From assembly GCF_016432865.1 (NCBI RefSeq), contig NC_067401.1, positions 112,096,001-112,160,000 on the forward strand: a DNA stretch of 64,000 bases, in the 5' to 3' direction. This document shows, piece after piece, positions 14,601 through 56,450 of this stretch. Below the pieces are notes generated by a model, which was not told the DNA's origin, ran no database searches, and was given only the letters and a program-made list of their open reading frames with translations. The stretch's first letter is position 1; the number at the start of each line of letters is the position of its first letter. This DNA comes from Antechinus flavipes (taxonomy: Eukaryota). The translations under genes and the position numbers were made by a program.

Positions 14601-17600
14601 NNNNNNNNNNNNNNNNNNNNNNNNNNNNNNNNNNNNNNNNNNNNNNNNNNNNNNNNNNNNNNNNNNNNNNNNNNNNNAATAAATGAATTTAAGAGGTTGA
14701 TGAGGGAGGGGGAATGACCAGAATCCCCTATGGGGTTGGGGAAATGGGGCTTCTGGAATAAATCACATCAGGTCTCCAAAATCTTGGGTAAGGTAAAGGG
14801 GAAGGAGGGAAGGGATAATAATACTGCCCCCACTCATCCTTGTTTTTTTGTAATCAGACATGACCATAAAATCCCACGTATCTTATTTTCTATTTCTGAG
14901 CCTGGCCCAGACAGTATCTAAAACTAAAGTTCTAGTGATAGGGATGAGGGTTTATAAACCTTCTCCCCAAATCACACCTCTGAGGTATGTGGAGTAGAGA
15001 ATCTCTGTTCAGTACAAGGGGACAAATGGGCTTAGAATCTGGGTCAGGAGGGGCACGACGGGGCTTCCCAGAAACAATCAGCCCAAATCCACAATATAAT
15101 CCAAGTCACACATTACAGCTTCATGCCTCCACCCCACTAGTAGCTCCTGAAGTACCCATGTGTCCCGTCCCTGTTCTTAAAAAAATCTGGGATAGTTTAC
15201 CCACCTGGTGCCCAAAGAGAAGGGGAGAGCACAAAAGCTGCTGCCTCCAGATTATTCTGGAGCTGAGACTGAGCTGAAGGCTCTAAGGGACTCATAAGGA
15301 GGCAAACCCCACTCCCACCAATGCAACATTCTCCTTCCCATACACAACTGAACCTGCAAGGCTGCTGAAAAGAAAGAATAAGACTGAATCTCTCTTGACT
15401 CAGAATCTCTGAGGGAGTTAGAAAATCAGTCAGGTGCCAGGCAGAATGTCTTTCACCCCAATATCTACTTCAGGGACCATCACCACCTCTCTAATCTATC
15501 TTTTTCCTGAGTAATTAAAGAGCTGTCTCCCCAGCATAGAGATGCATAACCAGGCTTGTGCAAAGAAAACGGCCATACAATTGAAAGAATCACTGAAGAT
15601 ACAATTCTCCTATCTCACTTACCCTTGAGGTTCTCACTGTATTACTTACTACCTCACCCTCCACCCCTACACTTTCCTCAGTATTCTCTTATCTAAGGAA
15701 TGGAAACCACAGGAAAAACCTAAGCATATAAAGAGACTAGTGCTAGCCCAGCCAGTCTCCTAAGGACATACTAAATCTTATGTACGATGAATTTAGCCCC
15801 TTCAACTTTGCTGATGTTACACAAATTGCCACTTATCTCCACTGACATCATCTCAACCAAGTCTCAGCTCCTTTTGCCCAGCAGCCCTGTTCTACCCCAA
15901 CACCCCACACTACTGCCAGGCATGCTATCTGGCAGTCAATACATGCCCTGAGCACTGCCCAGCTGCAGACAAGTGGGCATTAGAACACAATACTAAGTTT
16001 TCTTGCTAGTGCTGAACAGAGGCTGAAGGCAGCTAAAAGCTGCCAAAGTCTACCATTTCTCCCTCATAGGTTTCTTCACCCCCAACCATTACCCCTCCAA
16101 GACTACTCCCACAACCAATTCCCCCTAAACACCAAGATATCTAATTGGCTTACCAGTGTTATATCCATGAGATCCATACCCACTTGGCTGTTGGAAAGGG
16201 GTGGCCGATGCGTTCACACTGACATTCACACCATGCTGCTTGGAAGAGGTAGGAGCGACCTGGAAGGGAAAGGGAGGGGGGCCTCAATGACCTTGTGAAG
16301 ATATCCTTACACTATGACTCTGTCCCATGGGACTAACTCAGAATTGTATATTGGTCAGTTCAATGGGGGAACTGAACTCAGTTAAGCAATGTGGGATGCT
16401 CACTTTACTACCTGAATGAAAGTTTTAAAAACCTACCAATGCTATCAGTGATGAATGGTCAAGTGAAGGTAAAAGGGGAGAGGGAACATCAGGCTAGCAA
16501 CATGTCTACAGAAAATAATGTCTACATGAGAATACATTTCTGATTTACTCTACTTAGAGATAAACAATCATTCTCTCTTCCTTTGCTAGGGATTTCTCCC
16601 CCCCCCCCCCCCCCCCCCCAAGCTCTGGGGTCAGGAATGCCTTCCTACCTGCTAAGAATCTAGCCAATGTACTGGAGAGTCAGGGTGAGTGATTATGGAT
16701 CTGGAAACCTGCCCTCTATAGAGAATGACCAAGGAGAGGTNNNNNNNNNNNNNNNNNNNNNNNNNNNNNNNNNNNNNNNNNNNNNNNNNNNNNNNNNNNN
16801 NNNNNNNNNNNNNNNNNNNNNNNNNNNNNNNNNNNNNNNNNNNNNNNNNNNNNNNNNNNNNNNNNNNNNNNNGTGAGTCTGCGTCTGATTCTGCTGGGGC
16901 TGTGCCAGGGTCGTGGCTGGGGCTGGGGATGAGGCATCTCCACGGCCGAACTTTGAGAGGTCACCTGTGCCAAGAGATTCTTAATGTCCACGGGGCCCTT
17001 TCATCTCTTGGGCAGTGGAATCACATGTTTCCAGGGGATGCCTTTTCAAAACTGTAAAATCTCAGTAATAGATGAAGTAACTTTTGTGCGGTGTTATATT
17101 TTTAATTAGTGGGCGAGCTGGGAGGAAAAAACAGGCTTTCTGACTTTTTTTCAACTACACATGCTGGGCCTACTGAAGACTCTATAAAGTTTTCACTGCA
17201 GATCTCTGGGTACCAGTGACTTAGACAGGTATTCTCTCCATCTGGAATTTTTATCTGCTATACTTTGTTCTTTTCCCAGAGATTAAATTCTATCTCTCTC
17301 CAACACTCCCAAATATCCTGAGGAGACAACAGGCATTCGTAAAACCACAATCACGTTCAGAAAAATTTCCTAAACTCTTACTATTGTGGAAGACACTGCA
17401 GAGGAGTTGATGGTAACTTTGCAATAGCTAGTATACTGGGCAAGAGTAAGGGACCTCCCAAGGTACCTTCCTCAAAATTCTGCACAGCTCTCTTCTGCTA
17501 CACTGCCAATTCAAGTCTTCTTTCACCATTCTGAAAATGTGGTTATCTCAGCACTTGTTCTCTAGGTATTTGCCTACAATGAATTATCGATTACCTGTGT

Positions 17601-20600
17601 CTCAGAGAAGCTAATTTCCCTTTCCTCTTTAGTGCACAACACACTTTTGTTTAAAACATACTTTTATTTAAGATAAGAGGTCAATGAAGGGGATGAAGGA
17701 TAGAATCATAAAAGCTACATTCACACAGCCCTTCATGACTACAAAGCACATTACATGTATTCTCTATGGAGACTTAGCCCTGTCACCAGTAGGGAAAGAC
17801 TCTTCTACATAAAGACAATAATAAAGCTCAGAGATTAAGCAACTTTTCTGTATCACTCAGCTAATGATCACACTCAGACTTCTAAGCTTGAATGCCAAGA
17901 TAACAGACCAGAAAAAAGAGGCCAGGGAAAATGGATTTTTAACAGGTAACAAGACTGCCACCAAAACGAGGACAAGAAGGAAAAATGAACTCAAGAAATT
18001 TAAGAATAGAAAGTGAGGTTCAAAGTATTTTCTCAGAAAAGCTGGTAAACATTAGAGTCACAGATATAACAGAAAAAGCTGGGAAGAAGCCTCAACAACA
18101 AAGCCTGTTCCACTAGGAGCCAAAAGTTAACATCTAATATTTTTTCCAAACCCTTCTTGCTGCTGACAAAACAGCCCAAAGAAGAGTTCCATAAGCTCCA
18201 ACATCACGTTCAGCCCCAACCCAGTCCTACCAGAGTAAGGGTTGCTGGCCAGGCTACCATCCCTCCCGGTCAACGGAGTAGTAGGTGTAGGGAATGGGAT
18301 GCTGTAGTAATCCTAGAAAACAGAACAAGGAGGTTGAAAATCCATACCTTAGTCCCCATTGTAGTGATCCTCAATAGGTTAGAAACAAAAATGTTAAGAG
18401 TAATGCGTATAGCCAGCCACCAATAGTGCTGGCCATAGATCACATAAGCTCTGTTTTCTCTGGCACACACTGTCCCCCCTGCTTGACTATTGGCAGAGTC
18501 AGGCAAGGTCTACGGGAGTGCCCATTTAAGTTGCCTAAGTACCTACAAGTGTTTTTTGTCCTGATTTATCTCCCATCCCTGCTGAAATCCTCTCTTCAAA
18601 AGTCACGGTCAAGATTATTCTCTTGAACAAACAGATACTGTTCTCTGGGTTTGCCAGGGGAAAAGTAAGGTACCCTAAGGTCCATAAGAAAGTGCTTAAG
18701 TGAGCACTGAGGATTGTCAGGTAGAGGTTCCAACTTGACACATAATTTTGATTTTTATTACATTAAGAAATTACCTCTTCCCCCAATTCTCAGCCTCTCT
18801 AAACAGCTTCTTTTGTCATGATTCTATCCCACATACTCACCAAGGGGAATCTTGTCTGAAGCATCTGCAAGTCGTCATAACCATACACTTGTGGCTGAAA
18901 GATACAGAAATATCTGTGATGAGGGAAGGTTGGTCACTAAATCCTTCCTATACCATACTCAAATATGGTAAGAATAGACCAAGGAAAACAAGTCAAGAGA
19001 ACCCAACAGCCAGCTTCTAAAGAGAAAGTCCCTTCTACCCTCTATACAAAAGTACCTTTAGAAGACCAGAAAAGAACACATTGGGTTTCTTCCATTTTTA
19101 AAGGGGAAAAAAACAAAAGGCCCAAGGTAATTTGTGCAAAAAATCCACTCATCAATTTTTATCCATCTTTTTCAAAATCTGGCTTAAGATCTCTCTCCTG
19201 AAAGCTTTCTCTGAGTTGGTACTAAGTTTTTGTTTTGGGTTTGTTTGTTTTTTTCCCCACTGGAGGAAGCTTTAACATCCTTAAAGTCAGGAAAATGCAT
19301 CTGTAAAGCCTTCCATTAAGTTTAGAGTCAACAACCATAGCAAAGAATCCTGAAAAACTGAATCCCAAGTTTACCCTGAAGTGTTCTAAAGACATGAGAG
19401 GAAAATAACTTTCTCCAGAGAAATTGAAAAAGATACCAAATTTATATTCAAACTACTAAAGACCCACTCCAAGTATGGATGATGGGATAGTTTGACTAGA
19501 CCCCATTTTTCTTCCTTGTTTTATGCTGTAAAATCCCAAAAATTAAACTCCCTAGTTTATATGTGGTTCCAACTAACTCATATTCACTCTGTGCAGAGTC
19601 AAAAAGCAAAAGGAAAGAGACAAGGAGAAGGACCATCTTACTTTTCAGAGATATCCCTCAAATCCCACTTACCGGGTAGGCATGTAACAGCCCTGGAGCC
19701 ATGATATATGGATTAGGCAACAACGGTGGGACCCCAGGAGGAAGGTTGGGGGGAGCTTTTCCTGAAAGAGAGAGGACACTTCTAATATGATAAATAACCA
19801 TTCCTTTTCCTCTTTACCCTGAAGACTTACCACCCACTTCCCAAGTAGGGTTACCTGAAGTTGTGGCAACTGAACTTCTGGTTGAGGCGGTGACGGTGGA
19901 GTTACTGCCCAGGCTGAGGCCTAGACTGCTGCCACTATTTAGGCTGGATGAGACGCTGACCACAGGGGGAGGCGCCGAGACTGTGCTGGATGCAGTAGAG
20001 AAAGTGCTGGAGGAAGAATGGAGACTCGCCTCACTTTCAACGCTTGTGTGCTACAAACAAGAGACAGGGAAGAAGGGAACAGAAGTTTTCACATTAGGTA
20101 AAAAGTCCAAGATCTTGCTACTAACCAAGCAATGAACTCTGGTCAGAAGAGCTGGGAGATTACAAGAGTGTTCTATGCCAATATAGGAAGGGGAACAAAA
20201 CCTCTAGCTAGCAGGTTTTTCAAACCATTCTAGCTGAGACCCATTCCTCCAAAAAACAGAAGAGGAAACTGACACAATCAATATGGAAACATCATACAAG
20301 GTACTGAAAAGCTATGCTAAATTAAGTAACATTAAGACCTTAAGATATCATTCCTGATGGACAATATTACAGTCACAGCATTATGGCTTCCCTTTTTGTT
20401 CCTTTCTCCTCTAACAAGAGACAATGGGAATGGGAAAGAAAGGATCTAATAATAACTCATGTAAACAAATTCTTTTAAGCTTCTAAATATCATGATAATT
20501 TGAAGATAAAGTGATGAGAGGTAAAAAAAAAAAAAAACTTAACCTCAGGCCACACACAATAAGACATCAACAGGAATTTTAATTCAGATCTTCTGATCAC

Positions 20601-23600: not shown

Positions 23601-26600
23601 TCATCTCATCAATTCCACTGAGTTAACACCTTATTTTAAGTATGTATACTTCTCCAGAACTCTGGCCTTCTATAGACTATTTTCATTTGAGCTTAACAAG
23701 ATCCTTGGAGTAGATGTTTAAGGTAGTATCTGAAACTCTTCCTGTCTTCAAATCAAATACTCCACATGCCAGCCATTTAAATACACCTGTTGAATGTCAA
23801 ACAAGGATCCCAGAGGACGGACTACAGTAATTAGCAGCATCCCCATTCACTCACCTGCTGTGTTGAGTGGTGGTAGTATTTGGAAGCTCCTCACTGTGGC
23901 TCAAGCCACCCAATGCGGATGAGTGCTGATTGGCTGTGGTCAGCAAGGAAGCTGCAGATACTGTGTCATTGAGAGGGGGGATGCTGGGAGCAGAGGGTGA
24001 GTCCGATTTCACCGCAGGGCCAGTAGCACCTAAGAAGAAAGGAGGAGTAAAGAAAAGAAAATTGCAATTTTAGAAGCCCTGAAGGGAAAAGCAGGAAAGA
24101 GTAAAGACGTAGCCAATATTCAAAACTGCCTCAATTATAAGCAAATAAGATTAGTAATAACAGTTCACTTTGATTTCAATAGAATCTATTTTTCTTTAAA
24201 AACTCCAATTATTAAGAGGCATCTAGATGGAGCAGTGGATAGAGCACCAGCCCTGAAGTCAGGAGGACCTGAGTTCAAATCTGTCCTCAGACACTTAATA
24301 CTTCTTAGCTGTGTAACCATGGATAAATCACTTAACCCCAACTGCCTCAGGAAAAAAAAAAAAAGCTACTCCAAATATCTGGAAAGTTATTATTTTCGTA
24401 TCATCTTTATAAGGGGAAGGTATCATTATCTCCACTGCAAAAAAACTAAGGCAAAGAAATATTTAGTTCTTGCCAAGATCAGTAAGTCAGAACATAAGAA
24501 AGACAAACTCCTGACCACTGACTTGGAATTTTTTCAATAGACTGCAATGTTATTATGTACTAAAATGATTTGCAGATATTTTACAATGAAAAAAAATTTG
24601 CATTTTAAATAAGATTTATGAAGAACCCTTCCAGTCAACATTTAAAAATATTTGTAAATAAAAAAATTATAAAAATCTACTAGTATTACACCAAATGAAG
24701 TCATTTTTAAAAAAAATTTGTATCATTAATACACTATGTGTCAGAATCACCAGAAGGCAAATTGAATAAAACATTTATCGTATGTGTATTTCTTTCATTT
24801 CTGAAGTGGATGTTTACTTTTACTGTCCATCTTGGACATTTTCACATTCTCTTCCCTTCAAATTCTTTGATTTTATTCACATTTTTGCATAAAGCATAGT
24901 TTTTTTAAAAAAAAAAACATTAATGGAAACAAATTCTGATCCTTTTAAATTCCTTTGTTAAAACTGATAATCAATTGATTATGTATTACATGGTAGCACT
25001 GGTTATGCTTAAAGACTAATTCTATACGAACAAGAAATTTTAGTCTTTTATACCATTCTTCATCAGTATCTAATGGTTTTCTGTAATGATGGGACATATA
25101 CATATTATATGCATATACATATATGGACAGCAAAACAGATGGGCTGTCTGATCTGCTATGTCTGCTGATAAAAACTCTTTTTCATGGATAGCTTTCTAAT
25201 AGTTTTGTGAAGTCTAGTTTGAGATATGTTCATCATATAGATACTAGAATAGAGGTTACAAAATAAAACAAAATACCTTTAGAAAGAAAACTGGAGAACA
25301 CTCACCTTCAACAGATTGTGTGGTCTGTAACTGTGTGGCCTGCACAGAGCTGAAGCCATTCTGGAGCAAAAAATAGATAGATCTGAGTGAGTAGAGCCTG
25401 TTAGTATTTGCCCAGGCTTATTCTCTATCAGCAAGCCTTTTCTTCAAAAAATTCAGAGGAAATTGACTGTATTTAAATAATTTAAATTGAAGGATTAACA
25501 CTCCCCACACCCAAAAAAAAAAGAAATTCATGGGAGTCTTAGAGGATAAGATATATGTGCATTAAAGGATAGCAGGTGATAGCCCCCAATCTACTAAGGA
25601 AACCCAGAGCCCTAAAAAGATGCTGGAAAGACTTACAGACCCAGATCAATGATCCTTAGGGGGAATGTCTATGGAAGTAATGCAGTTCAGCCAAGCCATT
25701 AATTTGGCAGCCTGTAGATCTGGCAGTCACTCCACATTTCCTCTTGCATACACTGTCCCCCCCAACTGGCCATGAGGCAAAGCCAGATGAGGTCTACTGG
25801 TATGCACCTAGCATTCTAGCAATCAGATATCCCAATGAGATGGGGCAGGCACTGGACTAGACACAAACCCTGCTCCATCAGCTGGGATCTTTACATTTAT
25901 TCCTCCAGGGAGAATGATTCTTTGGTGCCAAGAGAACAGTCAGCTGGGCTTGGCCCAATCGCAGAAACGTGCTCTCCTTTCCTGCTTCTGCCCAGGTGCT
26001 CCCCAAGGACCCTCTGCAGCATTTGTGGCAAAGTGAAATGTTGAACCATGAGGGATTTTGTCCCCTTGTTCTCCCAACCACCTCCCAGGAGCTTCTAATC
26101 AACCTACCTTTGCCTGAGTCAGGTCCTTCTGAGGAGACGAGGAGATGGAGTTGGGGTACCGCCGAGTCTGTGTGGATCTCTGTTCATAGAGCGGGCCCTG
26201 AGCACTGTTTTGGGAGGTATAGGTTGTCGACTGAATTGGGCCGCTCTGATAGCCAGACTCCTGACTCTGGTTGGATGAAATTGTGGATGAAGACTCACTA
26301 TGTGGGATAAACAGAGAAACACACAATCATGTGTGGAATAGATGAAACTTACTAATAGATCAGGATTGTCAGGAAGGATCCTACTAAGATACAGGGTCAA
26401 TTCAATCACAATAAAGAAATCCTGTACCACCAAGTTACCAAATCTAAATCTCCACCACTGCCTCCTGGCCATCACTTGGATACAACATATGTCTACAATA
26501 CCAGTGGTACAGACAATATAATTCAGAAAACCCGACTAGAACTTTGAGTAGAAGGCACAAAGGAGTCACTAAAGGTAAAAATAATAATAAATATTATTTA

Positions 26601-29242
26601 TTTAAAAATTAAAAAGGACCTTATATGTCAAAAGTTCAAATTGTAAAGCTACATAGAAACTTCTACAATCTCACTATCATTTATGCAGTTTTTTTGTGGT
26701 TTGCAAAGTTACACTTTATCTCCTTTGATCTTTAAAACCACACAGATTAAATGCTATTATTCTTTTTTTTTTTTTAAACAAATGAAGAAACTGAGGCTGA
26801 CGGAATTTAAGTGACTTGTTCAGGGTCACATAAATCTTATAATTATGATTTAAACTAAGGAAGATCCGAGTTATAAATCCATTCCATCAACTATGTCTTC
26901 AACCTGCAAAGTACTATACTATAGTCTTGCAAGTTCCTTGACAAGTAGTCATCCAGCTGAAATTTACCTCCCTCTTATTTATACACATCTGGTTCTAATT
27001 ACATCAAGCAGAAGCACTTTCAATATCAAATCACTTCCTGTTCGCTTAATAGCTGTTACCAGAGAAGATAAAGTATCTATCTGTTTTGCCTCTCTGCTCC
27101 TTGAGGAGATAAGCTCTTCCAGATCTTTAGTTTTCACACATTTTAGGAAAAATGAAAAAGCCATGAAGAATCTGAATGGCAATAGTGCTATCCAACATGG
27201 ATACCCCAATGAATCCCAGATTGTGAACCCTAAACAGTGGATTCATCTTCTATTACTCAACTTAAGCCAACAAGTTCAAGATCACTTCCTCAAGACTCCA
27301 TTAATTCAACAAACACTGAATAATATAACTTTAAATGCCACTGAAAGGGCATCCTTGAGATGATCTAGTTTCATTTCCCAGGAGCCTCATTTTGCCCAAT
27401 ATTTTATTCAACTTCATTCCTCACTTTAGGCCTCCAAAGTTGAATAGTCAAGTTGCTGCTAACCACTGGGGGAAGGAGTCTTTTCACACCTGTAGAGTGA
27501 ATGGCTTCAGGAAGACAAGCTCATATAACTTTAAGGTTTTCTGTTATATATGCTAACCACTCTCCATGAAGTCTATGAAAAAATCCAGGAAGGAATCTAC
27601 TTGTTTCTTCTGGAGCACACTAGCTTCACCCAACTCTTTTCCCCCCGATCTCTTTATTCACATATTTTATGTCACTTACATTATGCAACTGTACTGGCAT
27701 CTATCCATATTTATCATGTATGTAGCTTACATTAACCCCCTTCCCCACATACCCACTTAAAATAGCACTTAAATGGGGAAGGGAATAAGCACTTATATAG
27801 GCCCTACAATCCAACAGGCAATCCTGTAATGAAGGTGCTGTTTGAGGTAGGTTGAGGAAATCGAGGTACAGGTTAAGGAACTTCCCCAGGGACACACAGC
27901 AAGTGTCTTCTTGAGTATGAATTTGTATTCAGGTCTTCATGGTTTTAGATGCAGGGTCCTAATCCCCATACCACCAGATGCTTTCCTTTACATGTTGAAT
28001 AGATTACAGTATATCCTGGATACAATATACGTGTGCAGAACTGAACAGTTTTCTTGTTGCACAGGGAGAATTGAATTCAGAAGGTATAAATAATCCGGGA
28101 AGAAAAACAAAAATGCAAGCAGTTTACATTCATCTCCCAGTGTTCTTTCTTTGGGTGTAGCTGCTTCTGTCCATCTTTGATCAATTGAAACTGAATTAGC
28201 TCTCTTTATCGAAGAGATCCACTTCCATCAGAATACATCCTCAAACAATATCATTGTTGAGGTATATAATGATCTCCTGGTTCTGCTCATTTCACTTAGC
28301 ATCAGTTCATGTAAGTCTCGCCAGTCCTCTCTGTATTCATCCTGCTGGTCATTCCTTACAGAACAATAATATTCCATAACGTTCATATACCACAATTTAC
28401 TCAACCATTCTCCAATTGATGGGCATCCATTCATTTTCCAGCTTCTAGCCACTACAAACAGGGCTGCCACAAATATTTTGGCACATACAGGTCCCTTTCC
28501 TTCCACCAGATGCTTTTAAAAAGCCACTGACAGCAAGCTTTTCTCGTGTTCTGAAGCCTACTTAACATATCATCTGCATTAAGTCTGCACACTTACCAGG
28601 AGTCAAACAGGCACATATTAATTACTACTTCCTTAAAGAAAATAACAAATGATCCTGATAGTGTTGATTTAAAGCACCACGAACATAAGAAAATCAACAA
28701 TAAAATACAAAAGTCCCTCTAATTTCTGATAGAAAACTTATCCTTAATTTTTCCTTCCCTAAATGAAACAGATTCAGGCTAGTTTTGGATCAATAGTCTC
28801 AAAAGTGACATGAACCTAAACCACAAGACAGCAGGCAGCTTTATATTGTACCTTGCAGTGCTGGTGTAGAGACTGCTTGGAGTCTGACTTGAGGAGGCGC
28901 TCGTGGTAGGAGTGGACTCATACTCTGAGAGAACAGGCTCTGACCCAAACTGTAATGCCCCAAACTGCAGGTTTAGCCCTGAGATATCCGCTGAGCCAGG
29001 CATCTCCACTGCCAGAGCAGGAATCTATAGAAAGACAGGAAGGGGGATGTGAGATTTAACCTTTTTATAACTTTATAGTTTTTAAAGATCTCACTGTTAC
29101 ATATTACCAAATTAAAAGATATGTAACTGTAAATTAGTCCAATAATTCTGGAAAATACTTTGGGACTGATAATCAAATGATTAAAACATCCTATATCTTT
29201 TCATCTAAGAGTAAGGATTAAAATAATGATAGCTAACACTCA

Positions 29243-29303
<61 letters not shown>

Positions 29304-32300
29304 CTCTTTAGAATTTAAAAAGAACATTATATATGTTATCTCATTTGATCCTAATTATAATTCTGTGAGGTTGATGTTATTATCTTTTTTTTCCAGATAA
29401 GAAAATTTTGGAGGCTTCCAGAGAGTATGTAATTTGTTCAAGTACTGCTTGAGACCAGATCTAAAATCCAATCTTCCTGATTCTTTATTCCAGATTTCTA
29501 CTAATTACACCCTCAGGTAGCTCCCACTGTTCAGCATAAAGCAAAACATTTATATCAGCACCTTTTATGTTATCAAAAACTAGAATCAAAGTAGATGTTT
29601 ATTAATTAGGGATGGGTAAGTAAATTATGGTACACAAATATTAGGAAATTTTACTGTGCAATTAATAAGCAACAAATATAACAAATAATGACAATTTTGG
29701 GAAGTCTTGTAACTTAATACAAAACAAAGTAAACAGAATAGGAAAATAATATGCACAAAGATTATATTACAAATGGAGGAACACCAAAGTGAATGCTGGG
29801 AAATGATAATAACCAAATGATAATAACAATAACCAATCGCTAAAGAAGAGATTAAAGAATGTCCTTCCCTCTCTTCTCTGCAGTTGGAAATCATAGCTGT
29901 GAAATGTTGTTCCTAATTTCAGAGTTTGTTGATGTGTGGAAAATTTTGTTTGTTTTTCTCTTTCCCTTAGTTATAAAGGATGACTCTCTAGGAAAGGAAT
30001 CAGGGAGGGAGGGAAAACAAAGGCAATGTAAAAAAAATTGATAAAATTTAAATAAAAATATCAAATGAAGGCAACAAGTTAAGGATGTAACCAAGTCTTC
30101 TGTGACTTTTGAACACAATTTGCATTAAGTGAGTGCCAATGATGTAATAGGATTCTTTGGCCCCCAGATCTTTAGGTGGGGGCTGGGTTAGGAAGCCCTG
30201 AATCTTCTGGAATAGGAATCTATCTCAGAAAACTCTCCTGATTCTGACCCCTCCTTAGCTGCTAGCCTCAGGAAAGTCCGAGGATAATCACCACCCTTAA
30301 GTCATCTGGAGATTGCTCCTTAGCCTGGAGTCACAAAGTCAACATGTATTCCCTAGCCTTAAGCTATAGAAGACAGGATAAAGCTGTGCTCTGTCTTTCA
30401 ATGCTTTGCTATTAGAATCAGGAATCTAGCCCACTAAAAATTCTTAAGTATCAAAATAAACTTTTTTTTTTTTTGGCCAACTTAACTTGGAGACTGGGAC
30501 TGCAAATTCTTTCTCTGTACCTGCAACACCGCCCTGGAGACCCTCAAACACTGTTAGGGTGTCTCATCCCTCAACACCTCTATCTACCTTAAAAGGCCCA
30601 TATAAAACTATGCCAAGTCCCATAATCCAAAGTACCTTTGAAGTCAAAGAGGCCTTTTTCTTTTGCTGCTTCAGTTTCTGCTGAGCGGGCTGGGGGCTGG
30701 AGGACTGGTTGTCTGATGAGCCCGGGGACATCTGTGGAGCTGAGGTGGACTTGCTCGGCAATGGAGAGGAAGGGGTCGGAGGTGCAGCTGTGGAGGTGGT
30801 CACTGCAGGTGGCTTTTCCTGCAGGAACACCTCCATCATGGCTGAAGATGGGGTGAAGGCCTGACGCTTTGTGAATGGGCTGTGGACTGTTGAATCACTT
30901 GGGTTCTTCAAATCTGATGGAGAAAAATTGATGTATATGTGTAAGACCATGCAAAGGCTACAGAACAAATTCTAAGAAAACTTGTCTAGAATCCTAAATT
31001 GTGCTTAAGGGGTAATCAGCACTTTTTCAATGCAGACCAAGAGGTTGGTTCCATTCTGATTGGCACCATCATCATTCTAGGGCAGAGATATAAAACAGAG
31101 AAGCTCCTTGGGGCCGATTCTTTTGTCAAGTCAGAAATAGTCCTACCCCTGGTTCTGAACTGTTCAAAGTTGGAAATATTTCCTTTTCACAATCAACCCA
31201 GGTGAACCAGAAGAAATTCTGTGAAATCTCCTGGTCAATGCAGGGCCTCCAGGCCAGGATATAGGAATCCATTGAATCAGATAAAATTAAGATTTATAGC
31301 CTCATAAATTCCTGTAATTCCCCAACTGCCTGGGCTCAATCTATCTGGGAAAGGGAAAATTAATGTGGGAAATGAGTCATTTGGCTGCCCCTTTCATCAC
31401 CCCACCATACATCTCTACCTACCCAATGGCAGCAACATTCTAACAATAATGACTATAACCTCCTGTCTTCCCTTACCATACTGCACCAGCGATGGGGATT
31501 GTGTTGTAGAGCCCATGTCCCAAGAGGAAGTGGTGGTGCTCCCACCCGACTGAGAGTGCTGAGCTGCCAACTGGGCCAAAGCCTGGGCTGTCTTGAACTG
31601 CTCCAAGAATTGGGAGCCTGTGGTGCTACCACCTTTAGCTTCGCCGACATCACCAAACCCCTTTCCTAGCATGCTCACCTGCAGATCAAGACAGAATCAC
31701 AGAAGTTCACTAAGGAATTCACATGGAATTACTAGCTTAGAGTGACATAGGCCAGATGAGTCAAGCCTATATTATACCTTCATACCTCCTGCAGGGAAAA
31801 ATGTCAATGGCTGTTTTTATAAAACAACCAACTTGATTATCCATGATAATGAGGGACAAGAAAACCACAAATAACTGAAAATAAAATACCATTTTAGCCA
31901 ACAATGCAAGACTCATTTCCACTTTTAGTTTTTTCACAAGAAGCCAAAAAGGACATCTTGAGAGTTTCTCCTCTCTGCCCCTAAATAGATGAGATGAAGA
32001 GATCATGAACTCTACACTGGTAAGTCAAATCTTATGGCTTCAGTAATAGATGTGATCAAATGTTTTTACAACAGAATAGATGCCCGAGTCCAAGTCTTAT
32101 CAGCTGTCCAAGCTTATACTTCAAAATTTATTGTTGCCATGTGGATAAAAGAACTAGTCTACTGATTATGCCCAGATAAAGCTGCCTTCAATCCATTCCA
32201 GACAATCAAGTTGTCTCATTTATTCTAAAAGATTTCTAGGGAAGGAAATTTATCCCAAACTTCCTTTAGCATTATTCACCACATGCCACCCAGAATTTAT

Positions 32301-35300
32301 TAGGCTGCAGCTCACTTACAATTTCTCTTACCCTACCTCAATCTCTACCAAGAATAGCAAAAATAAACAAATAACAGAAGTTCTAGTCAAAATTAAGGAA
32401 TTATTGAAAAATAATCTCCTATTAAGAGAATTATAAAGAACTAACCTAGAACAAGATACAAGACAAATGCTTCACAATATTTCATTATCCAACATACCAT
32501 ATCATAATTAAATGAAAATAGTAGAACTGTAAAGCTGATTTTTAAAACAAGCCAACACTGAAATAGAATTTATAAAAAATCAATGTAATTCAATCAATAG
32601 TAAATATATCACTACATAAGATCCTAGTGAAATTATAAAATTTAAATAACACCAAATAAGATCAGAAATTTAAAACTGGAATGGATCTTAAGTCAACCCC
32701 CCTCACTTTACAGATGAGGAAAATTAGGTTTGGAGATCTAAAGCAAGCTTTAGTCAAATAGGTAAGAAGCAATGCCAGAATTTCAACTGAGATCCTCTGA
32801 CTCCAGATCCAATATTCATCCTATACCACATGTTGACCTCAGGGAGTTGATAATCCAATTATGAATTAAACTTATAGTTCTCTTTAGGAGGCTATGAAGC
32901 ATGAAGTAACATATAGAACCATTTTTTAATCTGAATAAGGGAGGGAATCAAGCAAAATACCCTTAATCTAATACAAAACATGTAGAATGTGAAGCTGAAG
33001 TTATATTAATGGAAAATATCATAGGTTAATACCATTAAGAATTTCTCTAGCACTTATCTTTGACAACCAAAAAACTAAGCCTTTTAGGATCAGAATAATA
33101 AATAATATTTAGAATAAAACAGTTTTGATTCTAGGTATAACAGGATTCAGCTCCAAATGCAATTATTCTCAGCTCTAGTAAGTCCTTGGACTTTATTATA
33201 TTAAGGTTTAATGTGTGGAACAAGATTAAGGACAAGCTAACATGATTTTGGACAAAATACTCAATCATGGCCCAGGATACTATCTTCCCTCTCCTAAATA
33301 TCCTCTTGTACTATTCTGCCCCCATTAGGGAAAGAGTATTAGGAATGAACCTAGCCCTAGCTCTGATGCTTAATTAGCTCTGTGACCTTGGACAAGTCAT
33401 TAAGCTTTGATTCCATGTGATCACCTGATAAAATGGAAAGGATGGACTAGATATCTCCAAGAAACCTTTTAGCACAAAGATTCTCTAAATTTTAACCATC
33501 CCTCCCTCCTCTCAGACTCCCAGAATTATTTGCCTCAATATTTGATGAATTTATTATCAAAGACACCTGCTTTAGTCTCTAGCACAGGGTATCATTTTTT
33601 GGTTTAATTTTTAACTACCTAAGATTTTTTTGAACCAAGCCATATGGTACACAGTGTATAAATTGAAGGTTTTGGTTTATAAAAATGCAATTTCTGCCTC
33701 CATTATGAAAAAAAATCCTGTTGCCTCTCAAACATGTAATCTCATCAAGCATATAAAGAAGGAAAAAAAGGTTTGTTCACAATTTGATCTGAAGCAACTT
33801 TTTTCTCCTTCTTAAAGTATATCATATCATTAATTATTTCAAACTTAATACAGGACCCAACATTTGAGTAGAGACCAACATTTTGCCTATAGTTAGCTCT
33901 GCTCCATTTCTATACCTGAGAAGCAGAAAAACAGAAACCAGAAACTTCTTAATTTCTAACTACTTGAAGGGAATGGAACAGGAGTAAGTGAAGGGTTCCC
34001 TCTACTTACCATGCTGTGATGGGAGAAGGTGCTTCCTGATGCAGGCTGTGATATGGTGTTCTGCTTTGAATTGCTGAACACCAGAGGCTGGGCCAGGGAA
34101 GGAGCCTGAGATGGATCCAGATTGGTTGATTCATTCTCCATTGAAGAAGGCGTCTTCCCTAGTAACACAGCAAGGTCGATCCTAGCAAAGACAGGAATAG
34201 CATTTGAAAAACAAAGGCAGAAACTTCCAAGTATTCCCTAATAACCTTTGCTTAGTTACAGCAACATAAGTGGTAAAAGGCATATCAGATAAAAAAAACT
34301 GAATCTGAAGTCTATATTCTTCTATGGAGAATACAACAGTACACAGGCAGTTCTGAAGCAACCAGCACATAAAGTAAATATAAGCGGCAGTAAACTCTAT
34401 TCACTTTACAGCTTGAGAGAATACTACAAATCCACCAAGTGAAATGAATGTTAAAGTTTTTTTAAAGCTTTGTTTTAGCATAAATTTGATGAATGAGCAC
34501 TTTGTCTTGGTTTGATATGGTAGCTTCACAAGTAGACCTAAACTTGCTAAAATTTGGCAATTTCACCCAAAAGTTTGAATACATTTTATCAACAATACAT
34601 AAAAACTTAAAACTCATTGAATTTAAAGCATAAGAGGTTCTTTCAAAAATTAGTTTTATATCTCTCTAACATCATACTTTTCATCATCTCTGGACAGCCA
34701 TTACATGTCAAAGAATAGAATAGCAAATCCAAGAGGTGACGAGGTTGGTTCAAGGAACAATGAGAACTGCTAAACAGAAGTGCCACACCAAAACCAACCT
34801 TAGGATCTATTAGCTTAACTTTGGCTATTCTGGAGGACAGGGAATGACAGTGATCAATGAATACCTACGGAGGTCCGAAACCATAGAAGACTGACGAGAC
34901 TAAACTCAGCATTATAAAGTAAATGGATAGCCTACCAAATTTTCAAAATTCAGAACGGTATGGGAAAATCTTCACTTGAATTCCAATAATAGCATCACTT
35001 ACTTTGAAAGAAATTAAGTTTAGGTAGATTGTAAGTATGATAAGCCTTACTTAATGACAGGAATATTGAAAGTTAAACTGAATAAAAAGCAGAACTTAAC
35101 AATTTCAAAAGAAAATCAGAAGCTCAAAGCAGAGCACCATATCACAGCCTGCATCAGGAAGTACTTTCTCCCAGCTCAGCATGATAAGTAGGGGAACCCT
35201 TCAATTATTCCTGACCCTTCAAGAAGTAGTTAAGAGAGTAAGAAGTTTCTAGGGTCTATTTTTCTACTACTCAGGTATAGAAATGGAGCAAAGATAAAAA

Positions 35301-38300
35301 ACTGGTCTCTAATCAAATAGGATCCTGTACTATTAATATGAAAAAAATTAGCAAAGGCCATGTGTAAAAGATAGTAAATAAGCTGAGTTTTAAAGGGAAT
35401 TATGGCTTCCAAAAGGAGTATGTGAGAAGAGAGTCAGCCTGTACAAAGGCACAGAAAACAAGAGACAGTTACATAAGAAACATATTTATTAGAATTCTGA
35501 AGTGGATGTAAGGCTAGGATTTACACATTAATAAAAGCTAGTGTTTTTGGGTTATACGACTAATATAACAATCACTTAAACTACTTATAAAGTTCCTAAA
35601 AGTACAGGAAAAAAGAGACTTATTCAAAATCTGTCCCCAAAGTCCCCTCGAGCCCCTAAGACAAAGTTTATTATACATTTTTTTTTACCTCTGACCAGCA
35701 GTGATTGTCACATTTTCTGCAGGCAGAGGCACTGAAGACACATTAGAGGCAGTGAAGATCTTGGTCTCAGAAAGCTGGAATGGAGATTAAGGAGTGAGTC
35801 ATTATCAGTTCCAAGTAGGCCACATTCAATGAGATGCAGGGAAAAAGTAATTTAGTCTCAAAGTTAAAAAAACCTGAGCTGTCTAGACCCTTAATAAACC
35901 AAACAGCTTTCAATAGATTTGAGGTACTTTAGTCTGAAATTAAGGAAAAGAGATTAAATAGATAAGCTTCTTCCACCTATATACTTTGATTTCATTCATA
36001 ATAAATGTTTAGTTGAGGAATAACAGAATAAATGATCAAAAGTTCATAGGATCATAAATTTAGAATTTCAAGAGGGGATAGAGTTGCATCTAATCCACCA
36101 GAAGATGAAACCAGGACTGAGAGGTGAAGCCACACAGTAAAAAGCACAACTGGCATTCAAATTCGGATCCTACTGACTCCAAATTCAGCATTCTTTTCAC
36201 TGTACCACTGACCAATAGTTTCTACAATTAGATAATCTGGCTGTTTTCATTATAAAAAGCAGAATTAAGGAAGGTATTTGACAGTGACATTTCCTTGGCC
36301 ATGAAGTAAAGTAAAGTAAAGGTTTCACAAATAGGAACATGAGCAACAATTACTTAAAAAAAAAAAAAAAAAAAGGGACTCATTCTTAGAAATCAACCAT
36401 GAGGTTCAAAGCATTAAAGTTTCAGTTCAGAGCAGGGATAAAGTTATTTCAACTCAAGTAACATTTACCTAAGTAATTCCAGAAACCTTCTTTTATATGT
36501 AACTTTATGTCACTGCAGTTTGAGATAGGTATGCTAATGGAGTCTAGCAATATTAAACACAAAAAGAAAGAGGCCAAAAGATCAACTAAATTATCCACTT
36601 GAGAATAAGGATTCATCATCATCTCTCCTACTTCCTTCGCCTCATATATAGCCTATTATGGAGTTAGACAAGGAGTAAGTATTTAACGTGACTATGAAAT
36701 GAAAGTATGACTTCATAAGGTCATGGCATAAGAATACTGGTTATACTGAGTCTCAGGAGTCGTTATATATAATTTAATTCTGCCAGAATTCCATTTCCAA
36801 CATTACCCTGGACTTGTCACTTTCCTGGCAATAAGTTTTATAGTATGCTGTCATAGTTATGCATGTACATATAATTATATGGTAGAACCTATATCTTGTA
36901 GCCCTTTCCACAATGTGACTTCTTTGAATCTTACTTATCTCTAGGGATGTCTTCATGTGCCACCTGAAATGTTTACAGGTCAATATCCTGAAGTTGTCCA
37001 TGGGTTGCAAAGATTTAGACTATTACTGGTAAGTGGAAGCCCAAACAACTTCTACCCTTGAGCATTCAGTATAAGAGAATTTTTAGGAATACTTACATCT
37101 TCATTCCAATCTTCGGTACCCCATTCCTCTGTTGCAGTCCTCCATGCACCTAAGAACAAAGGGAAGAATTGAGAAGTGACTTAAAACACCATGAAGTAAG
37201 ACACACTTAAGAAACAATTCTAAAATATTTTTCAGGCAAAAAAGTGATAAGGTCTAGTGGACAGAAAAAATTCCCAAGTACAAAATCATGAACTAGACCC
37301 TCCCCCAAAGTGGCATCTCTGAATATAAGATTTTACTGGGATTATGACTTCACATTCATCACCATTGCCTTCTACAATCAGTTCAGCAGCAGGCACAAAA
37401 AACAACCATCCACCCCACCCCCCACTAGGCAATATCCTTTATAGAAACTCAGTCCTCTGGCCTGGTAGAATTTACCAGGTCATATAATAGGATGGTAAAA
37501 GGCAACATAAACAAGAGCATGCAACTGAGCTTACTTAACTGGGATAAGGAAAAAAAAATCCCAGGTGATCTGAAGAGAGATGGCAACAGTGATTTAAGAG
37601 CACAGTTAAAAAAAAAATTGGTTTTGATGATGGTTCATGACAAAACAGTGAAAGAAGGATGGGAAGGTGAATAGAGGGTAGGGTATTGAAGTAAAAAGTG
37701 CTGGATTTGGAAGTCAGAAGAGACCTGAGTTTATATCCTAATTCCAAAACTCCCAGTGATATCATGGTCATATGACCTCAATGAGTTTTCCTTTCCTCAT
37801 CTGTAAAATAGGGATATTACTTTAAACTAACTCCCTCACAGTATTGTTATGAGGAAAAAAGCTCTAAAGAAATGCAAATAGTTATTACCTGCCACTTACT
37901 TAATTTCATAGTAAGAACATATCCAAAACTAACTCAGCTAGAAACTAAAAATAAAAGATCTAATGCCTCCAAAAGCTATACTGTGGAAAGAGACAGATCA
38001 CTAAAGTCAGGAGTAAAAGCCACAATTTCAAACTCCTATGCATTCAGAACAGGTTTATCTCTTGAGTGGGGAAGAGGGTGAAGGGAAGGGAAGGGAAGGA
38101 AAGGAAAGGACAATACAAAAACAAAACCCCAAAACCCCTTTATTCCTTGGTTTTCATTGTATTTCTCTCAGTTCAACCTGGGAATCTCTAGCTCCTCCCT
38201 AAGAACCCCCTCTATTGACTAATTTAAAAAACAAACACTGGGTTTGAGGTAATGGGAGTTTGTGGGAGAAAAGACTAAAGCACAAGAAGATGCATCTATA

Positions 38301-51034: not shown

Positions 51035-51462
51035 NNNNNNNNNNNNNNNNNNNNNNNNNNNNNNNNNNNNNNNNNNNNNNNNNNNNNNNNNNNNNNNNNN
51101 NNNNNNNNNNNNNNNNNNNNNNNNNNNNNNNNNNNNNNNNNNNNNNNNNNNNNNNNNNNNNNNNNNNNNNNNNNNNNNNAGAATATATTTACCACTGTCC
51201 TCACTCCCCTTAAAAAAACAAAAACAAAAACAAAAAACCACCCACAATTCTTATCATTCTTCTCTAGGCACAGCAAACCAAGGGAATATCTGCTTTCAAA
51301 GAAACATCATATTTAGACTGATAAGCATCTTAAGAGATCATGGCTTTTATTACTTGCTTGAAGATGGACAGCCACATAAAAAGTACAAAAAAGTTACCAG
51401 CTCATTCCAGTTCTACTAGTCCTCAACAAGTGGGGCTATCTGTAAGCCAATGCAACCTGCTA

Positions 51463-54699: not shown

Positions 54700-56450
54700 A
54701 CGAGTGGAGATTTCAGTCCGAGAGATACACGGGGAGCCGGTAGGACCAATCGCCCACCTCTCCCCAAAAGATTAATTCTTTGCACTCAAAATAAAAAACC
54801 CATAAGGAAATAAAGTAAGGGGCGTGGGCTACTTCGTCCCACGACTCCTCAGATCTCTCCTTGCTGAAACCCTGACTGAGTCCTAGCTCAGAAGAGAAGA
54901 GGCCCCAAGGAGATCCTAAGGCTGGAAAGGGAGAATGCCGCGGCCCCCAATTACCCACCCCCCCCGCGGCCTTCTCTTCAGGAACAGGGTTATAAAAAGG
55001 GAAGAAGGGGGAGCCCTACCTCAGGCCCGGCCCAGACCGCGCTCGCTCCCTCGCGCTCTCTCCACCCCCCAGGCCCGAGCCGCATGGCCCCCCCCGGCCA
55101 CCCCGCGCCCCGCCCGGCCACGCTCCCAAATCTAGGCCCCGGCTCCGGCGCGGCCCAGTAGGCCGCAAGCCCGACCATAAACAAAACCCCGGCGGCTGGC
55201 CCAGAGTGGCGGGGGTGGGGGAGGTGGGGGAGCCTGGGGCCCGCGCGACTGGAGGGGGGGGGCACAGCGCGCGGAGGGGGGGGAGGGGAAGCCCGCACCG
55301 CGCGAGGTGGGGGGGGGCAGCTGCTGGGAGAAGGGGCCACCGCGGGAGGAGAGAAAANNNNNNNNNNNNNNNNNNNNNNNNNNNNNNNNNNNNNNNNNNN
55401 NNNNNNNNNNNNNNNNNNNNNNNNNNNNNNNNNNNNNNNNNNNNNNNNNNNNNNNNNNNNNNNNNNNNNNNNNNNNNNNNNNNNNNNNNNNNNNNNNNNN
55501 NNNNNNNNNNNNNNNNNNNNNNNNNNNNNTTCTCTCTCCACCCCCCCCTCTTTTTCCTCTCGCGCTCGTTCTCGCGCCTTTCCCCTCCCACTCTCCTTCC
55601 TTCCTCCCTCAGCACGTGACACGCAAAGAGGCGCGCGCCCGTCGTCCTGCCACGAGCCACCTTCTCCAGATTCGTGAGACAGCCTCCTCCGGTCACGTGA
55701 CTTGCTCAAGCCCTCCTTTTCCTCCTACTCTCGGAGGCCCGCCTTCCTCTCACGGGCTTTCTCTTTCCACCTTGCCAGTGTCACGTGCCAAGAAAGAAAA
55801 GGAACTCGTCACACTTCCCTCCGCCCTCTTTCCCTTCCCGTCCTCAGTCTCCCCCCATCCCCCCCAGCCTTAGTCCCAGTGCTCCCCCCCGGCCGCCATG
55901 TTTTCTGACAAGGCCCGGCTTTGGCTTCCCCCATAAGACATGGCCACGGAGTACCAAAGAAACGTAGGGCCGTCGCTACTACGGAGCCCGAGCTAACGAA
56001 GCTGGAGGGAGGCCATGGCGTCAGGCAGTAACTGGCTATCGGGAGTAAATGTTGTGCTGGTGATGGCCTACGGGAGCTTGGTGAGGAGACGACCCCCGCC
56101 CCCAGAGCTAGCCCGGAGGCCGGCCATCCACGCCCATTCCCAGTTCCTCTCGTGCGGTGTCCCCAGCTTGCTGACCCGCCCCCCACCCCCACCCCCACCC
56201 CCCCGCCCCGAGGGAAGACCCAAGCCTGCTTCTCCGGAAGCCGGAGTGGGGGGTTCAAGGAGCCGGAGCTGCCGCGGGGCTCAATGGGGTGTCCCAGAGC
56301 CTCTCCGCAGCCGCCCATCTTTCCCGCCAGGTATTCGTGCTGCTGTTCATTTTTGTGAAGAGGCAGATCATGCGATTTGCTATGAAGTCTCGAAGAGGCC
56401 CTCATGTCCCCGTGGGGCACAACGCCCCCAAGGTGGGTTTCTCCTCAAGC
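54700..56450. promoter_or_regulatory. Bidirectional CpG-island promoter shared by UBAP2L (-) and C1orf43 (+)
   Basis: GC- and CpG-rich between head-to-head genes. E-boxes CACGTG at 55613-55618, 55694-55699 and 55782-55787; YY1-like GCCGCCATGTTTT at 55892-55904. A candidate UBAP2L non-coding exon 1 donor GAG|GTAGGG lies at 55020/55019 (lower confidence). Confidence 0.85.

What the first reader, a model, noticed from the sequence alone, without database searches (positions are those of the whole stretch)
33845..35336. Built-in intronic antisense arm that can pair over the UBAP2L exon 11 5' splice site
Seen in sequence: 35124-35336 is an inverted copy of 33845-34069, covering the last 60 nt of exon 11, its donor and ~165 nt of intron 11. 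The exonic part is 55/60 identical. In the copy the donor ATG|GTAAGT reads ATGATAAGT, which would form a G-U wobble in the duplex. Inference: in the pre-mRNA the copy lies ~940 nt upstream of exon 11 and is complementary to it, so it could fold into a ~200-bp stem that hides the donor from U1 and offers an ADAR substrate. Skipping the 172-nt exon joins e10 (...CAG AG) to e12 (GTG AGC...), giving AGG TGA, an immediate stop that predicts NMD. This would be a non-transposon, lineage-specific structural switch on UBAP2L dosage. Caveat: lower divergence in the exonic part than the intronic part is also what neutral decay of a duplicate predicts.
Basis: partly seen in the sequence, partly recalled or inferred. 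Interest (0 to 1): 0.75.

Follow-up and report, generated by a model that had tools for sequence, protein, structure and literature searches.

The report
Old inverted exon-end copy in UBAP2L
A marsupial UBAP2L gene carries, in the intron before one exon, a real but old and decaying back-to-front copy of that exon's end and splice signal; it could pair with the exon in the RNA, but nothing found here shows that it has been kept as a regulator.

Summary
Window 35116-35336 is an inverted copy of 33845-34077, with blastn E 6e-51. The copied stretch is the last 68 nt of a 172-nt UBAP2L exon, its GTAAGT donor and about 165 nt of the next intron. It is the only such inverted repeat in the 64-kb window and has no other copies there, so it is not a transposon. 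Folding predicts a 204-bp imperfect duplex of -289.5 kcal/mol that holds the donor with probability 1.0. Skipping the exon gives AGG TGA at the new junction.

The "dosage switch" reading is not supported.
- Outgroup exons place 7 of the 8 exonic differences on the copy. That is 10% per lineage, the same as half of the intronic arm divergence (K2P 0.22).
- The mismatches show no significant bias towards keeping pairs.
- Five loci from other vertebrates with enough upstream sequence lack the arm.

Most likely this is an old templated inverted micro-duplication that is tolerated and decaying neutrally. It may serve as an ADAR substrate and a minor source of unproductive splicing.

No RNA evidence could be obtained. 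Unchecked notes of this scan report similar intragenic inverted copies elsewhere in this genome.

The parts
34010..34181 (-). It is 172 nt and encodes (R)IDLAVLLGKTPSSMENESTNLDPSQ...TFSHHSM.
   Evidence: Sequence and translation. The same exon was found at 80-86% nucleotide identity in ten loci of other vertebrates. A downstream exon of the same gene hits Pfam UBAP2-Lig.
34004..34009 (-). 5' splice site GTAAGT of that exon, inside the downstream arm.
   Evidence: It is predicted to be paired to the upstream arm with probability 1.0 at all nine positions from -3 to +6.
33845..34077 (-). Downstream arm, the source of the duplication: the last 68 nt of the exon, the donor and about 165 nt of the following intron. 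Weak homology may run on to about 33830.
35116..35336 (-). Upstream arm: the inverted copy of the source, lying in the preceding intron. In the pre-mRNA it is antisense to the exon end and donor. Weak homology may run on to about 35355.
   Evidence: Polarisation with outgroup exons shows that this arm carries 7 of the 8 exonic differences and the G-to-A change at the donor.
34078..35115 (-). Loop of 1038 nt between the arms. It holds the 3' part of the preceding intron, the acceptor, and the first 104 nt of the exon.
34059..34059 (-). Exonic A, the middle base of codon AAC (Asn). It faces a C (the complement of 35134) between perfect helices of 11 and 27 bp. From own knowledge, an A opposite C is a favoured ADAR context, and editing here would read as AGC (Ser). 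Ser is the residue in four of the five outgroup exons compared.
   Evidence: This is a prediction only.
35689..35774 (-). Preceding exon of 86 nt, ending CAG AG.
31477..31678 (-). Following exon of 202 nt, starting GTGAGC.

Best explanation
This is an old, lineage-restricted inverted micro-duplication that does not derive from a transposon. About 235 bp were copied in reverse orientation into the preceding intron, 1.04 kb away. The copied stretch is the last 68 nt of a constitutive-looking UBAP2L exon, its donor and the start of the next intron. The most likely cause is a replication template switch or a templated insertion at a break; that step is inferred.

Since then the exon has stayed under protein-coding constraint, while the copy and the intronic part of the source have drifted at the neutral rate. 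This is shown by polarised substitutions.

In the pre-mRNA the two arms can form an imperfect duplex of about 204 bp that engulfs the 5' splice site. This is shown only by thermodynamic prediction.

I infer that the duplex forms on a fraction of nascent transcripts. There it would be edited promiscuously by ADAR, and it would cost at most a small, unregulated share of exon inclusion. The skipped product has an immediate stop codon and should be removed by NMD. On this view the structure is tolerated, not maintained as a dosage switch.
For: The repeat is real and unique in the window.

The exon-derived part is homologous to an exon conserved across vertebrates, so the exon is the source and the arm is the copy.

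Of the 8 exonic differences, 7 lie on the copy (7/68, or 10%) and 1 on the exon. The intronic arms differ by K2P 0.22, or 0.11 per lineage. The copy's exon-complementary part therefore evolves as fast as intron-derived sequence.

Among the 22 transition differences, 13 give G.U and 9 give A.C. There are also 14 transversions and 19 gap columns, so the pattern shows no sign that pairing was preserved.

The arm divergence is far larger than the roughly 1-4.5% implied by the 31-mer shares of the related organisms B to F. The duplication therefore predates their common ancestor and has persisted for a long time in this gene.

UBAP2L is haploinsufficient in human and mouse (PMC9385150). A strong loss of productive mRNA would therefore hardly have been fixed at a time when the duplex was still perfect.

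Folding: cofold of the arms gives -289.5 kcal/mol and 204 bp, with a longest perfect helix of 27 bp. The donor is paired to the arm with P = 1.0. The MFE of growing transcripts pairs the arms as soon as the exon end has emerged.

Precedents: inverted intronic Alus pair, are edited, and shift a neighbouring exon from constitutive to alternative (PMC2533698). Complementary regions are enriched in editing sites and generally obstruct splice sites (PMC8052449).
Against: No RNA data and no orthologous intron from a close relative could be obtained. As a result, neither the small size of the effect nor the absence of compensatory changes is measured.

Both halves of the comparison lie inside the duplex. 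If the whole stem were under weak selection, both would be slowed together, and no neutral rate from outside the arms is available to calibrate against.

Polarisation at synonymous sites rests on distant outgroups.

The equilibrium model predicts complete sequestration of the donor. Taken at face value, that would mean a large effect.
Confidence: 0.6

Rival explanations
1. The arm is a selected structural switch: by hiding the donor from U1 it sets or regulates the rate of exon skipping, and the skipped mRNA (AGG TGA) is destroyed by NMD, which tunes UBAP2L dosage.
For: The donor is predicted to be fully paired to the arm. The arm stabilises the 1.6-kb segment by about 150 kcal/mol relative to shuffled arms. 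Skipping gives an immediate stop codon. The structure has persisted for a long time. Long-range pairings that cover splice sites are generally obstructive (PMC8052449).
Against: The part of the copy that is complementary to the exon and donor has decayed at the per-lineage rate of intron-derived sequence. There is no significant bias towards pair-preserving changes, and indels break the stem. With the arm shuffled, the model still pairs most of the donor locally (mean P unpaired 0.17-0.19), so the model discriminates poorly. UBAP2L is dosage-sensitive (PMC9385150). No regulator or RNA evidence is in hand.
Confidence: 0.12
2. The arm acts as an exon-complementary sequence for ADAR. The duplex directs A-to-I editing in the exon. 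The best candidate is A 34059, which faces a C and whose editing would turn Asn into Ser, the residue in most outgroups compared. Editing at the donor could also change the protein or the splicing.
For: Perfect helices of 27 and 11 bp flank an A.C mismatch at 34059. Four of the five outgroups compared have G there, so editing would mimic the probable ancestral base. Exon-intron duplexes beside a 5' splice site are the known layout of the GluR-B R/G site (PMC1920255).
Against: No reads could be laid, so no editing has been seen. Known recoding ECS elements are short, close to the site and conserved. This arm is 1 kb away and decaying. Long imperfect duplexes are usually edited promiscuously and without functional consequence.
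Confidence: 0.1
3. The arms act as flanking inverted repeats that bring the exon's donor and acceptor together and promote a 172-nt single-exon circular RNA.
For: One arm lies in the upstream intron and about 165 nt of the other lie in the downstream intron. [quoted passage not shown]
Against: The duplex covers the donor itself, which should hinder its use. The stem also includes 68 nt of the exon that would have to be circularised. No back-splice evidence is available.
Confidence: 0.06
4. The duplex essentially never forms in vivo, and the repeat has no molecular effect at all. Possible reasons are the 1-kb loop, the upstream arm being tied up in other pairings or coated by proteins, and unwinding by helicases.
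For: Before the downstream arm is transcribed, 122-128 of the 236 bases of the upstream arm are predicted to be paired elsewhere. From my own knowledge, classical work (Eperon et al. 1988; Solnick and Lee 1987) found that hairpins with long loops sequester splice sites poorly in vivo. The neutral decay also fits this reading.
Against: Inverted Alu pairs at similar distances and with similar identity are demonstrably edited, so they do pair in vivo (PMC2533698).
Confidence: 0.1
5. The inverted copy is an assembly artefact.
For: None found.
Against: The arms differ by about 12% in the exonic part and about 19% in the intronic part, plus indels, whereas an artefact would be near-identical. Two samples of organism A hold 97-98% of the sampled 31-mers of the 5.85-kb stretch, and related organisms hold 24-70%.
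Confidence: 0.02

Closest known systems
Inverted intronic Alu pairs that change splicing of a neighbouring exon (Lev-Maor et al. 2008, PMC2533698)
   Same: Both have two arms of 200-300 nt in opposite orientation, about 80-85% complementary and roughly 1 kb or less apart, in the same pre-mRNA next to an exon. Both are expected to form dsRNA, to be edited by ADAR and to shift the exon towards skipping.
   Different: The arms here are not transposons. One arm is the exon end, the donor and the proximal intron itself, so the splice site lies inside the stem instead of beside it. Pairing and any splicing effect are unmeasured here.
Exon-complementary sequences of ADAR recoding sites, such as the GluR-B (GRIA2) R/G hairpin at the 5' splice site (PMC1920255)
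   Same: An intronic sequence is complementary to the end of an exon and its donor, which gives a possible link between editing and splicing.
   Different: Known ECS elements are short, lie close downstream of the exon and are deeply conserved. This arm is 235 nt long, lies 1 kb upstream, is restricted to one lineage and is decaying at the neutral rate. No editing has been shown.
Conserved long-range complementary regions in pre-mRNAs (PCCRs; Kalmykova et al. 2021, PMC8052449)
   Same: It is long-range intramolecular pairing that overlaps a splice site. In that catalogue such pairings are depleted at active splice sites and are described as generally obstructive.
   Different: PCCRs are defined by conservation of both sides. 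Conservation could not be tested here, and the substitution pattern argues against it.
Other intragenic inverted copies noted by this scan in the same genome (BRD7, STX5, PON2, STK19/C4, C9orf78; unchecked AI notes)
   Same: They are small local inverted copies of exon-flanking sequence within the same gene, which suggests a recurrent mutational process.
   Different: I did not check those loci. The C9orf78 note reports matched double changes, and none could be looked for here.

Membership tests
Inverted-repeat dsRNA in a pre-mRNA (IRAlu-like) | Two long complementary arms in opposite orientation in one transcript, within 1-2 kb or so | tested here: met
   Arms of about 233 and 221 nt lie 1038 nt apart on the same strand of one gene. 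Cofold gives 204 bp at -289.5 kcal/mol.
Inverted-repeat dsRNA in a pre-mRNA (IRAlu-like) | Arms derive from a dispersed repeat family | tested here: not met
   There is no other copy in the 64-kb window. One arm is a vertebrate-conserved exon plus its own intron.
Inverted-repeat dsRNA in a pre-mRNA (IRAlu-like) | Double-strandedness in vivo, shown by clustered A-to-I editing or crosslinks | not testable with these tools
ADAR exon-complementary sequence (ECS) | Intronic sequence complementary to exonic sequence | tested here: met
   In the 68-nt exonic part, 60 positions are complementary, with perfect helices of 27 and 11 bp.
ADAR exon-complementary sequence (ECS) | Site-selective editing of an exonic adenosine | not testable with these tools
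   No reads could be laid. The A.C mismatch at 34059 is only a candidate.
ADAR exon-complementary sequence (ECS) | Evolutionary conservation of the ECS | tested here: inconclusive
   No relative could be fetched. Within the genome, the copy's exon-derived part has changed at 7 of 68 positions, equal to the intronic per-lineage rate, which argues against conservation.
Regulated unproductive splicing (AS-NMD) | The alternative event introduces a premature stop codon | tested here: met
   The exon is 172 nt, which is not a multiple of three, and the new junction reads AGG TGA.
Regulated unproductive splicing (AS-NMD) | The alternative isoform exists and rises when NMD is blocked | not testable with these tools
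   No RNA reads were available.
Regulated unproductive splicing (AS-NMD) | The regulatory element is under purifying selection | tested here: inconclusive
   The pattern fits neutral decay, but no outside neutral rate or orthologue is available.
circRNA-promoting flanking inverted repeats | Complementary sequences in both introns flanking the circularised exon | tested here: met
   The upstream arm lies in the preceding intron, and about 165 nt of the downstream arm lie in the following intron. However, the stem also covers the donor and 68 nt of the exon.
circRNA-promoting flanking inverted repeats | Back-splice junction reads | not testable with these tools
UBAP2L gene | UBAP2/lingerer domain and the host-gene snoRNA | tested here: met
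   Pfam PF12478 hits the exon at 28782-29009 at 2.5e-10. Two intronic SNORA58 copies were found. The exon translations match UBAP2L as I recall it; that last point rests on my own knowledge. Exons were searched one by one and never joined.

The most novel reading that the evidence does not exclude
The inverted copy is a working, lineage-specific regulator born from the gene's own exon. By sequestering the exon's donor, and being tuned by ADAR editing or dsRNA helicases, it would set the fraction of UBAP2L pre-mRNA that skips the exon and is destroyed by NMD. It would also direct a restorative Asn-to-Ser recoding at 34059. That would make it an example of an ECS or structural splicing switch caught at its origin by inverted duplication.
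Probability: 0.1. Interest if true: 0.7.

Novelty: new member of a known kind. Interest (0 to 1): 0.35.

Why it matters
If the duplex forms and matters, it would show how an exon-complementary sequence can arise in one step from the exon itself. It would also show how a dosage-sensitive stress-granule gene tolerates or exploits a 200-bp dsRNA over one of its splice sites.

As things stand, it is a clean natural test case. It is a non-repeat stem of known polarity over a strong donor, so its effect on splicing and editing could be measured directly with RNA-seq or a minigene. Together with the other inverted copies noted in this genome, it points to a recurrent mutational process that seeds long-range RNA structure in introns.

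Tried and rejected
1. Read evidence. The look-up of sequencing runs listed DNA-like runs of organisms A to F and six RNA runs. I therefore have no junction, editing or presence/absence data. No letters of 33371-33408 went to any tool afterwards, and the window was split beside them.

2. Close relatives. An exact look-up of an ORF over the upstream arm found nothing. A word search with the exon ORF found only distant vertebrates, in which only the exon aligns. A word search with the intronic ORF found nothing. Two exact-pattern scans of metagenome contigs were blank.

3. The big representative-protein search was not used.

4. P0011 looked like the human or primate exon from memory, so it was neither fetched nor compared.

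5. Transposon origin was rejected.

6. Retrocopy of pre-mRNA with a poly(A) tail was rejected. The A-rich stretch after the copy aligns with an A-rich stretch of the source.

7. The higher identity of the exonic part as evidence for selection was rejected.

8. UBAP2L splicing regulation by RPL22 concerns the last exon and is not relevant here.

Full report
**What is there**

The gene lies on the minus strand.
- The exon at 28782-29009 hits Pfam UBAP2-Lig at E 2.5e-10.
- Two SNORA58 genes lie in introns.
- The exon translations read like UBAP2L; this last point rests on my own knowledge.

The exon in question is 34181-34010. It is 172 nt long, with donor GTAAGT at 34009-34004. The previous exon is 35774-35689 and ends CAG AG. 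The next exon is 31678-31477 and starts GTGAGC.

**The repeat**

The repeat finder reports five colinear inverted pieces between 33862-34077 and 35116-35318. blastn joins them as 33846-34077 against 35332-35116, with E 6e-51. They are the only inverted repeats of at least 60 nt within 5 kb of each other in the whole window. The arm has no other copy in the window, so it is not a dispersed element.

Homology begins 68 nt before the exon's end and is 60/68 identical there. The intronic part is 121/149 identical, with 19 gap columns that include a 10-nt indel. The copy's donor reads ATAAGT.

The upstream arm starts 352 nt after the previous exon's donor and ends 934 nt before this exon's acceptor.

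**Predicted structure**

| Measure | Result |
|---|---|
| MFE structure of 33845-35336 | pairs the arms end to end |
| Cofold of the two arms | -289.5 kcal/mol, 204 intermolecular pairs, longest perfect helix 27 bp |
| Each arm folded alone | -47.2 and -66.9 kcal/mol |
| Partition function, 1.6-kb segment | all nine donor positions (-3 to +6) paired to the upstream arm, P = 1.0; MFE -533.7 |
| Same segment with the arm shuffled | MFE -375 to -383 |

Two caveats apply. First, with the arm shuffled, or with pairs limited to a 300-nt span, the model still pairs most of the donor locally (mean P unpaired 0.15-0.19). The model alone therefore says little about access for U1. Second, before the downstream arm exists, 122-128 of the 236 bases of the upstream arm are predicted to be paired elsewhere. 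The MFE switches to arm-arm pairing as soon as half of the exonic part has emerged.

**Origin and polarity**

Ten loci from other vertebrates were fetched through ORF products that contain the exon. Their species are unknown. Only the exon aligns with the window, at 80-86% identity, so they are distant outgroups.

The five loci with 1.8 to 10 kb of upstream sequence (L006-L010) have no inverted copy of the exon end. The other five (L001-L005) have only 400-560 nt of upstream sequence and cannot speak to this.

Compared with five of these outgroup exons (L001, L005, L006, L008, L010), 7 of the 8 differences in the exonic part, and the donor G-to-A change, fall on the intronic copy. One difference, 34059 G to A (Ser to Asn), probably falls on the exon.

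The copy's exon-derived part has thus changed at 7/68 positions, or 10%. The intron-derived arms differ by K2P 0.22, or 0.11 per lineage. These rates are equal, which is what a constrained exon and a freely decaying copy give. The difference in identity between the exonic and intronic parts is not significant (Fisher p 0.09 to 0.24).

Among the 22 transition differences, 13 leave a G.U pair and 9 an A.C mismatch. There are also 14 transversions. The slight G.U excess is not significant. From my own knowledge of Green et al. 2003, transcription-associated strand asymmetry, which enriches G and T on the coding strand of both arms, would also produce such an excess.

**Age**

The 31-mer shares of related organisms are 0.70, 0.69, 0.51, 0.38 and 0.24. 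They imply roughly 1-4.5% divergence from the window's species. That is far below the arm divergence, so the duplication should predate their common ancestor and be present in all of them. This is inference and was not observed.

Unchecked notes of this scan call the genome an Antechinus, a dasyurid marsupial. They also list similar intragenic inverted copies in BRD7, STX5, PON2, STK19/C4 and C9orf78. I did not test those.

**Interpretation**

The structural potential is real, and precedent makes some in vivo pairing likely.
- Inverted intronic Alus of similar size, identity and spacing pair, are edited, and shift a neighbouring exon to alternative splicing (PMC2533698).
- Complementary regions are enriched in editing sites, depleted at active splice sites and generally obstructive (PMC8052449).
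- An exon-intron duplex at a donor couples editing and splicing at the GluR-B R/G site (PMC1920255).

Against a selected switch stand the neutral decay of exactly the part that covers the exon and donor, the indels in the stem, and the dosage sensitivity of UBAP2L (PMC9385150). That sensitivity makes it unlikely that a strong loss of productive mRNA was fixed at a time when the duplex was still perfect.

My best reading, at 0.6, is a tolerated and neutrally decaying templated inverted duplication. It probably gives promiscuous editing and at most a minor unproductive-splicing leak.

One concrete prediction follows. A 34059 faces a C between perfect helices of 11 and 27 bp. From own knowledge, an A opposite C is a favoured ADAR context. 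Editing there would read as Ser, the residue in four of the five outgroups compared.

**Limits**

After that I worked beside those places and sent none of their letters to any tool. No close relative could be fetched.

Exon inclusion, editing, circular RNA, presence in relatives and compensatory change therefore all remain unmeasured. One hit, P0011, resembled the human exon from memory and was left alone.

Noticed in passing
window 18389-18523 (-) and 25667-25807 (-): Two SNORA58 H/ACA snoRNA genes lie in UBAP2L introns, both above Rfam's gathering score (111.9 and 87.3 bits). The second is the one another first-stage note calls an extra paralogue.
   Followed up: partly
window 34059 (-) facing 35134: An exonic A (codon AAC, Asn) sits opposite a C between perfect helices of 11 and 27 bp in the predicted duplex. 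The copy and four of the five outgroups compared have G (Ser) here. The copy thus seems to preserve the pre-substitution state, and editing would mimic it.
   Followed up: partly
window 35148-35051 or 35148-35003 (-): Inside and just after the upstream arm, the sense RNA has an acceptor-like ...ttcctgatgcag|G. It is followed by two donor-like sites, AA|GTAAGG at 35050 and AA|GTAAGT at 35002. A 98- or 146-nt cryptic exon is conceivable, but the sites were not scored and no RNA evidence exists.
   Followed up: no
window 8655-8783, 9186-9325, 10159-10298, 14222-14351, 14490-14677, 16741-16872, 51035-51179, 55358-55529: There are eight runs of N, each 129-188 nt long, which is about exon size.
   Followed up: no
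window 28228-28506 (-): A 92-aa ORF resembles the C-terminal part of LINE-1 ORF2 as I remember it, so it is probably an L1 fragment in the intron. A (TG)n microsatellite lies at about 29230-29300.
   Followed up: no
L006-L010: UBAP2L loci of unknown vertebrates, found in Logan and JGI metagenome contigs, have much shorter introns. In L008 the next exon starts about 750 nt downstream and the UBAP2-Lig exon lies 2.7 kb downstream. This looks like host DNA in metagenome samples.
   Followed up: no
   Followed up: no
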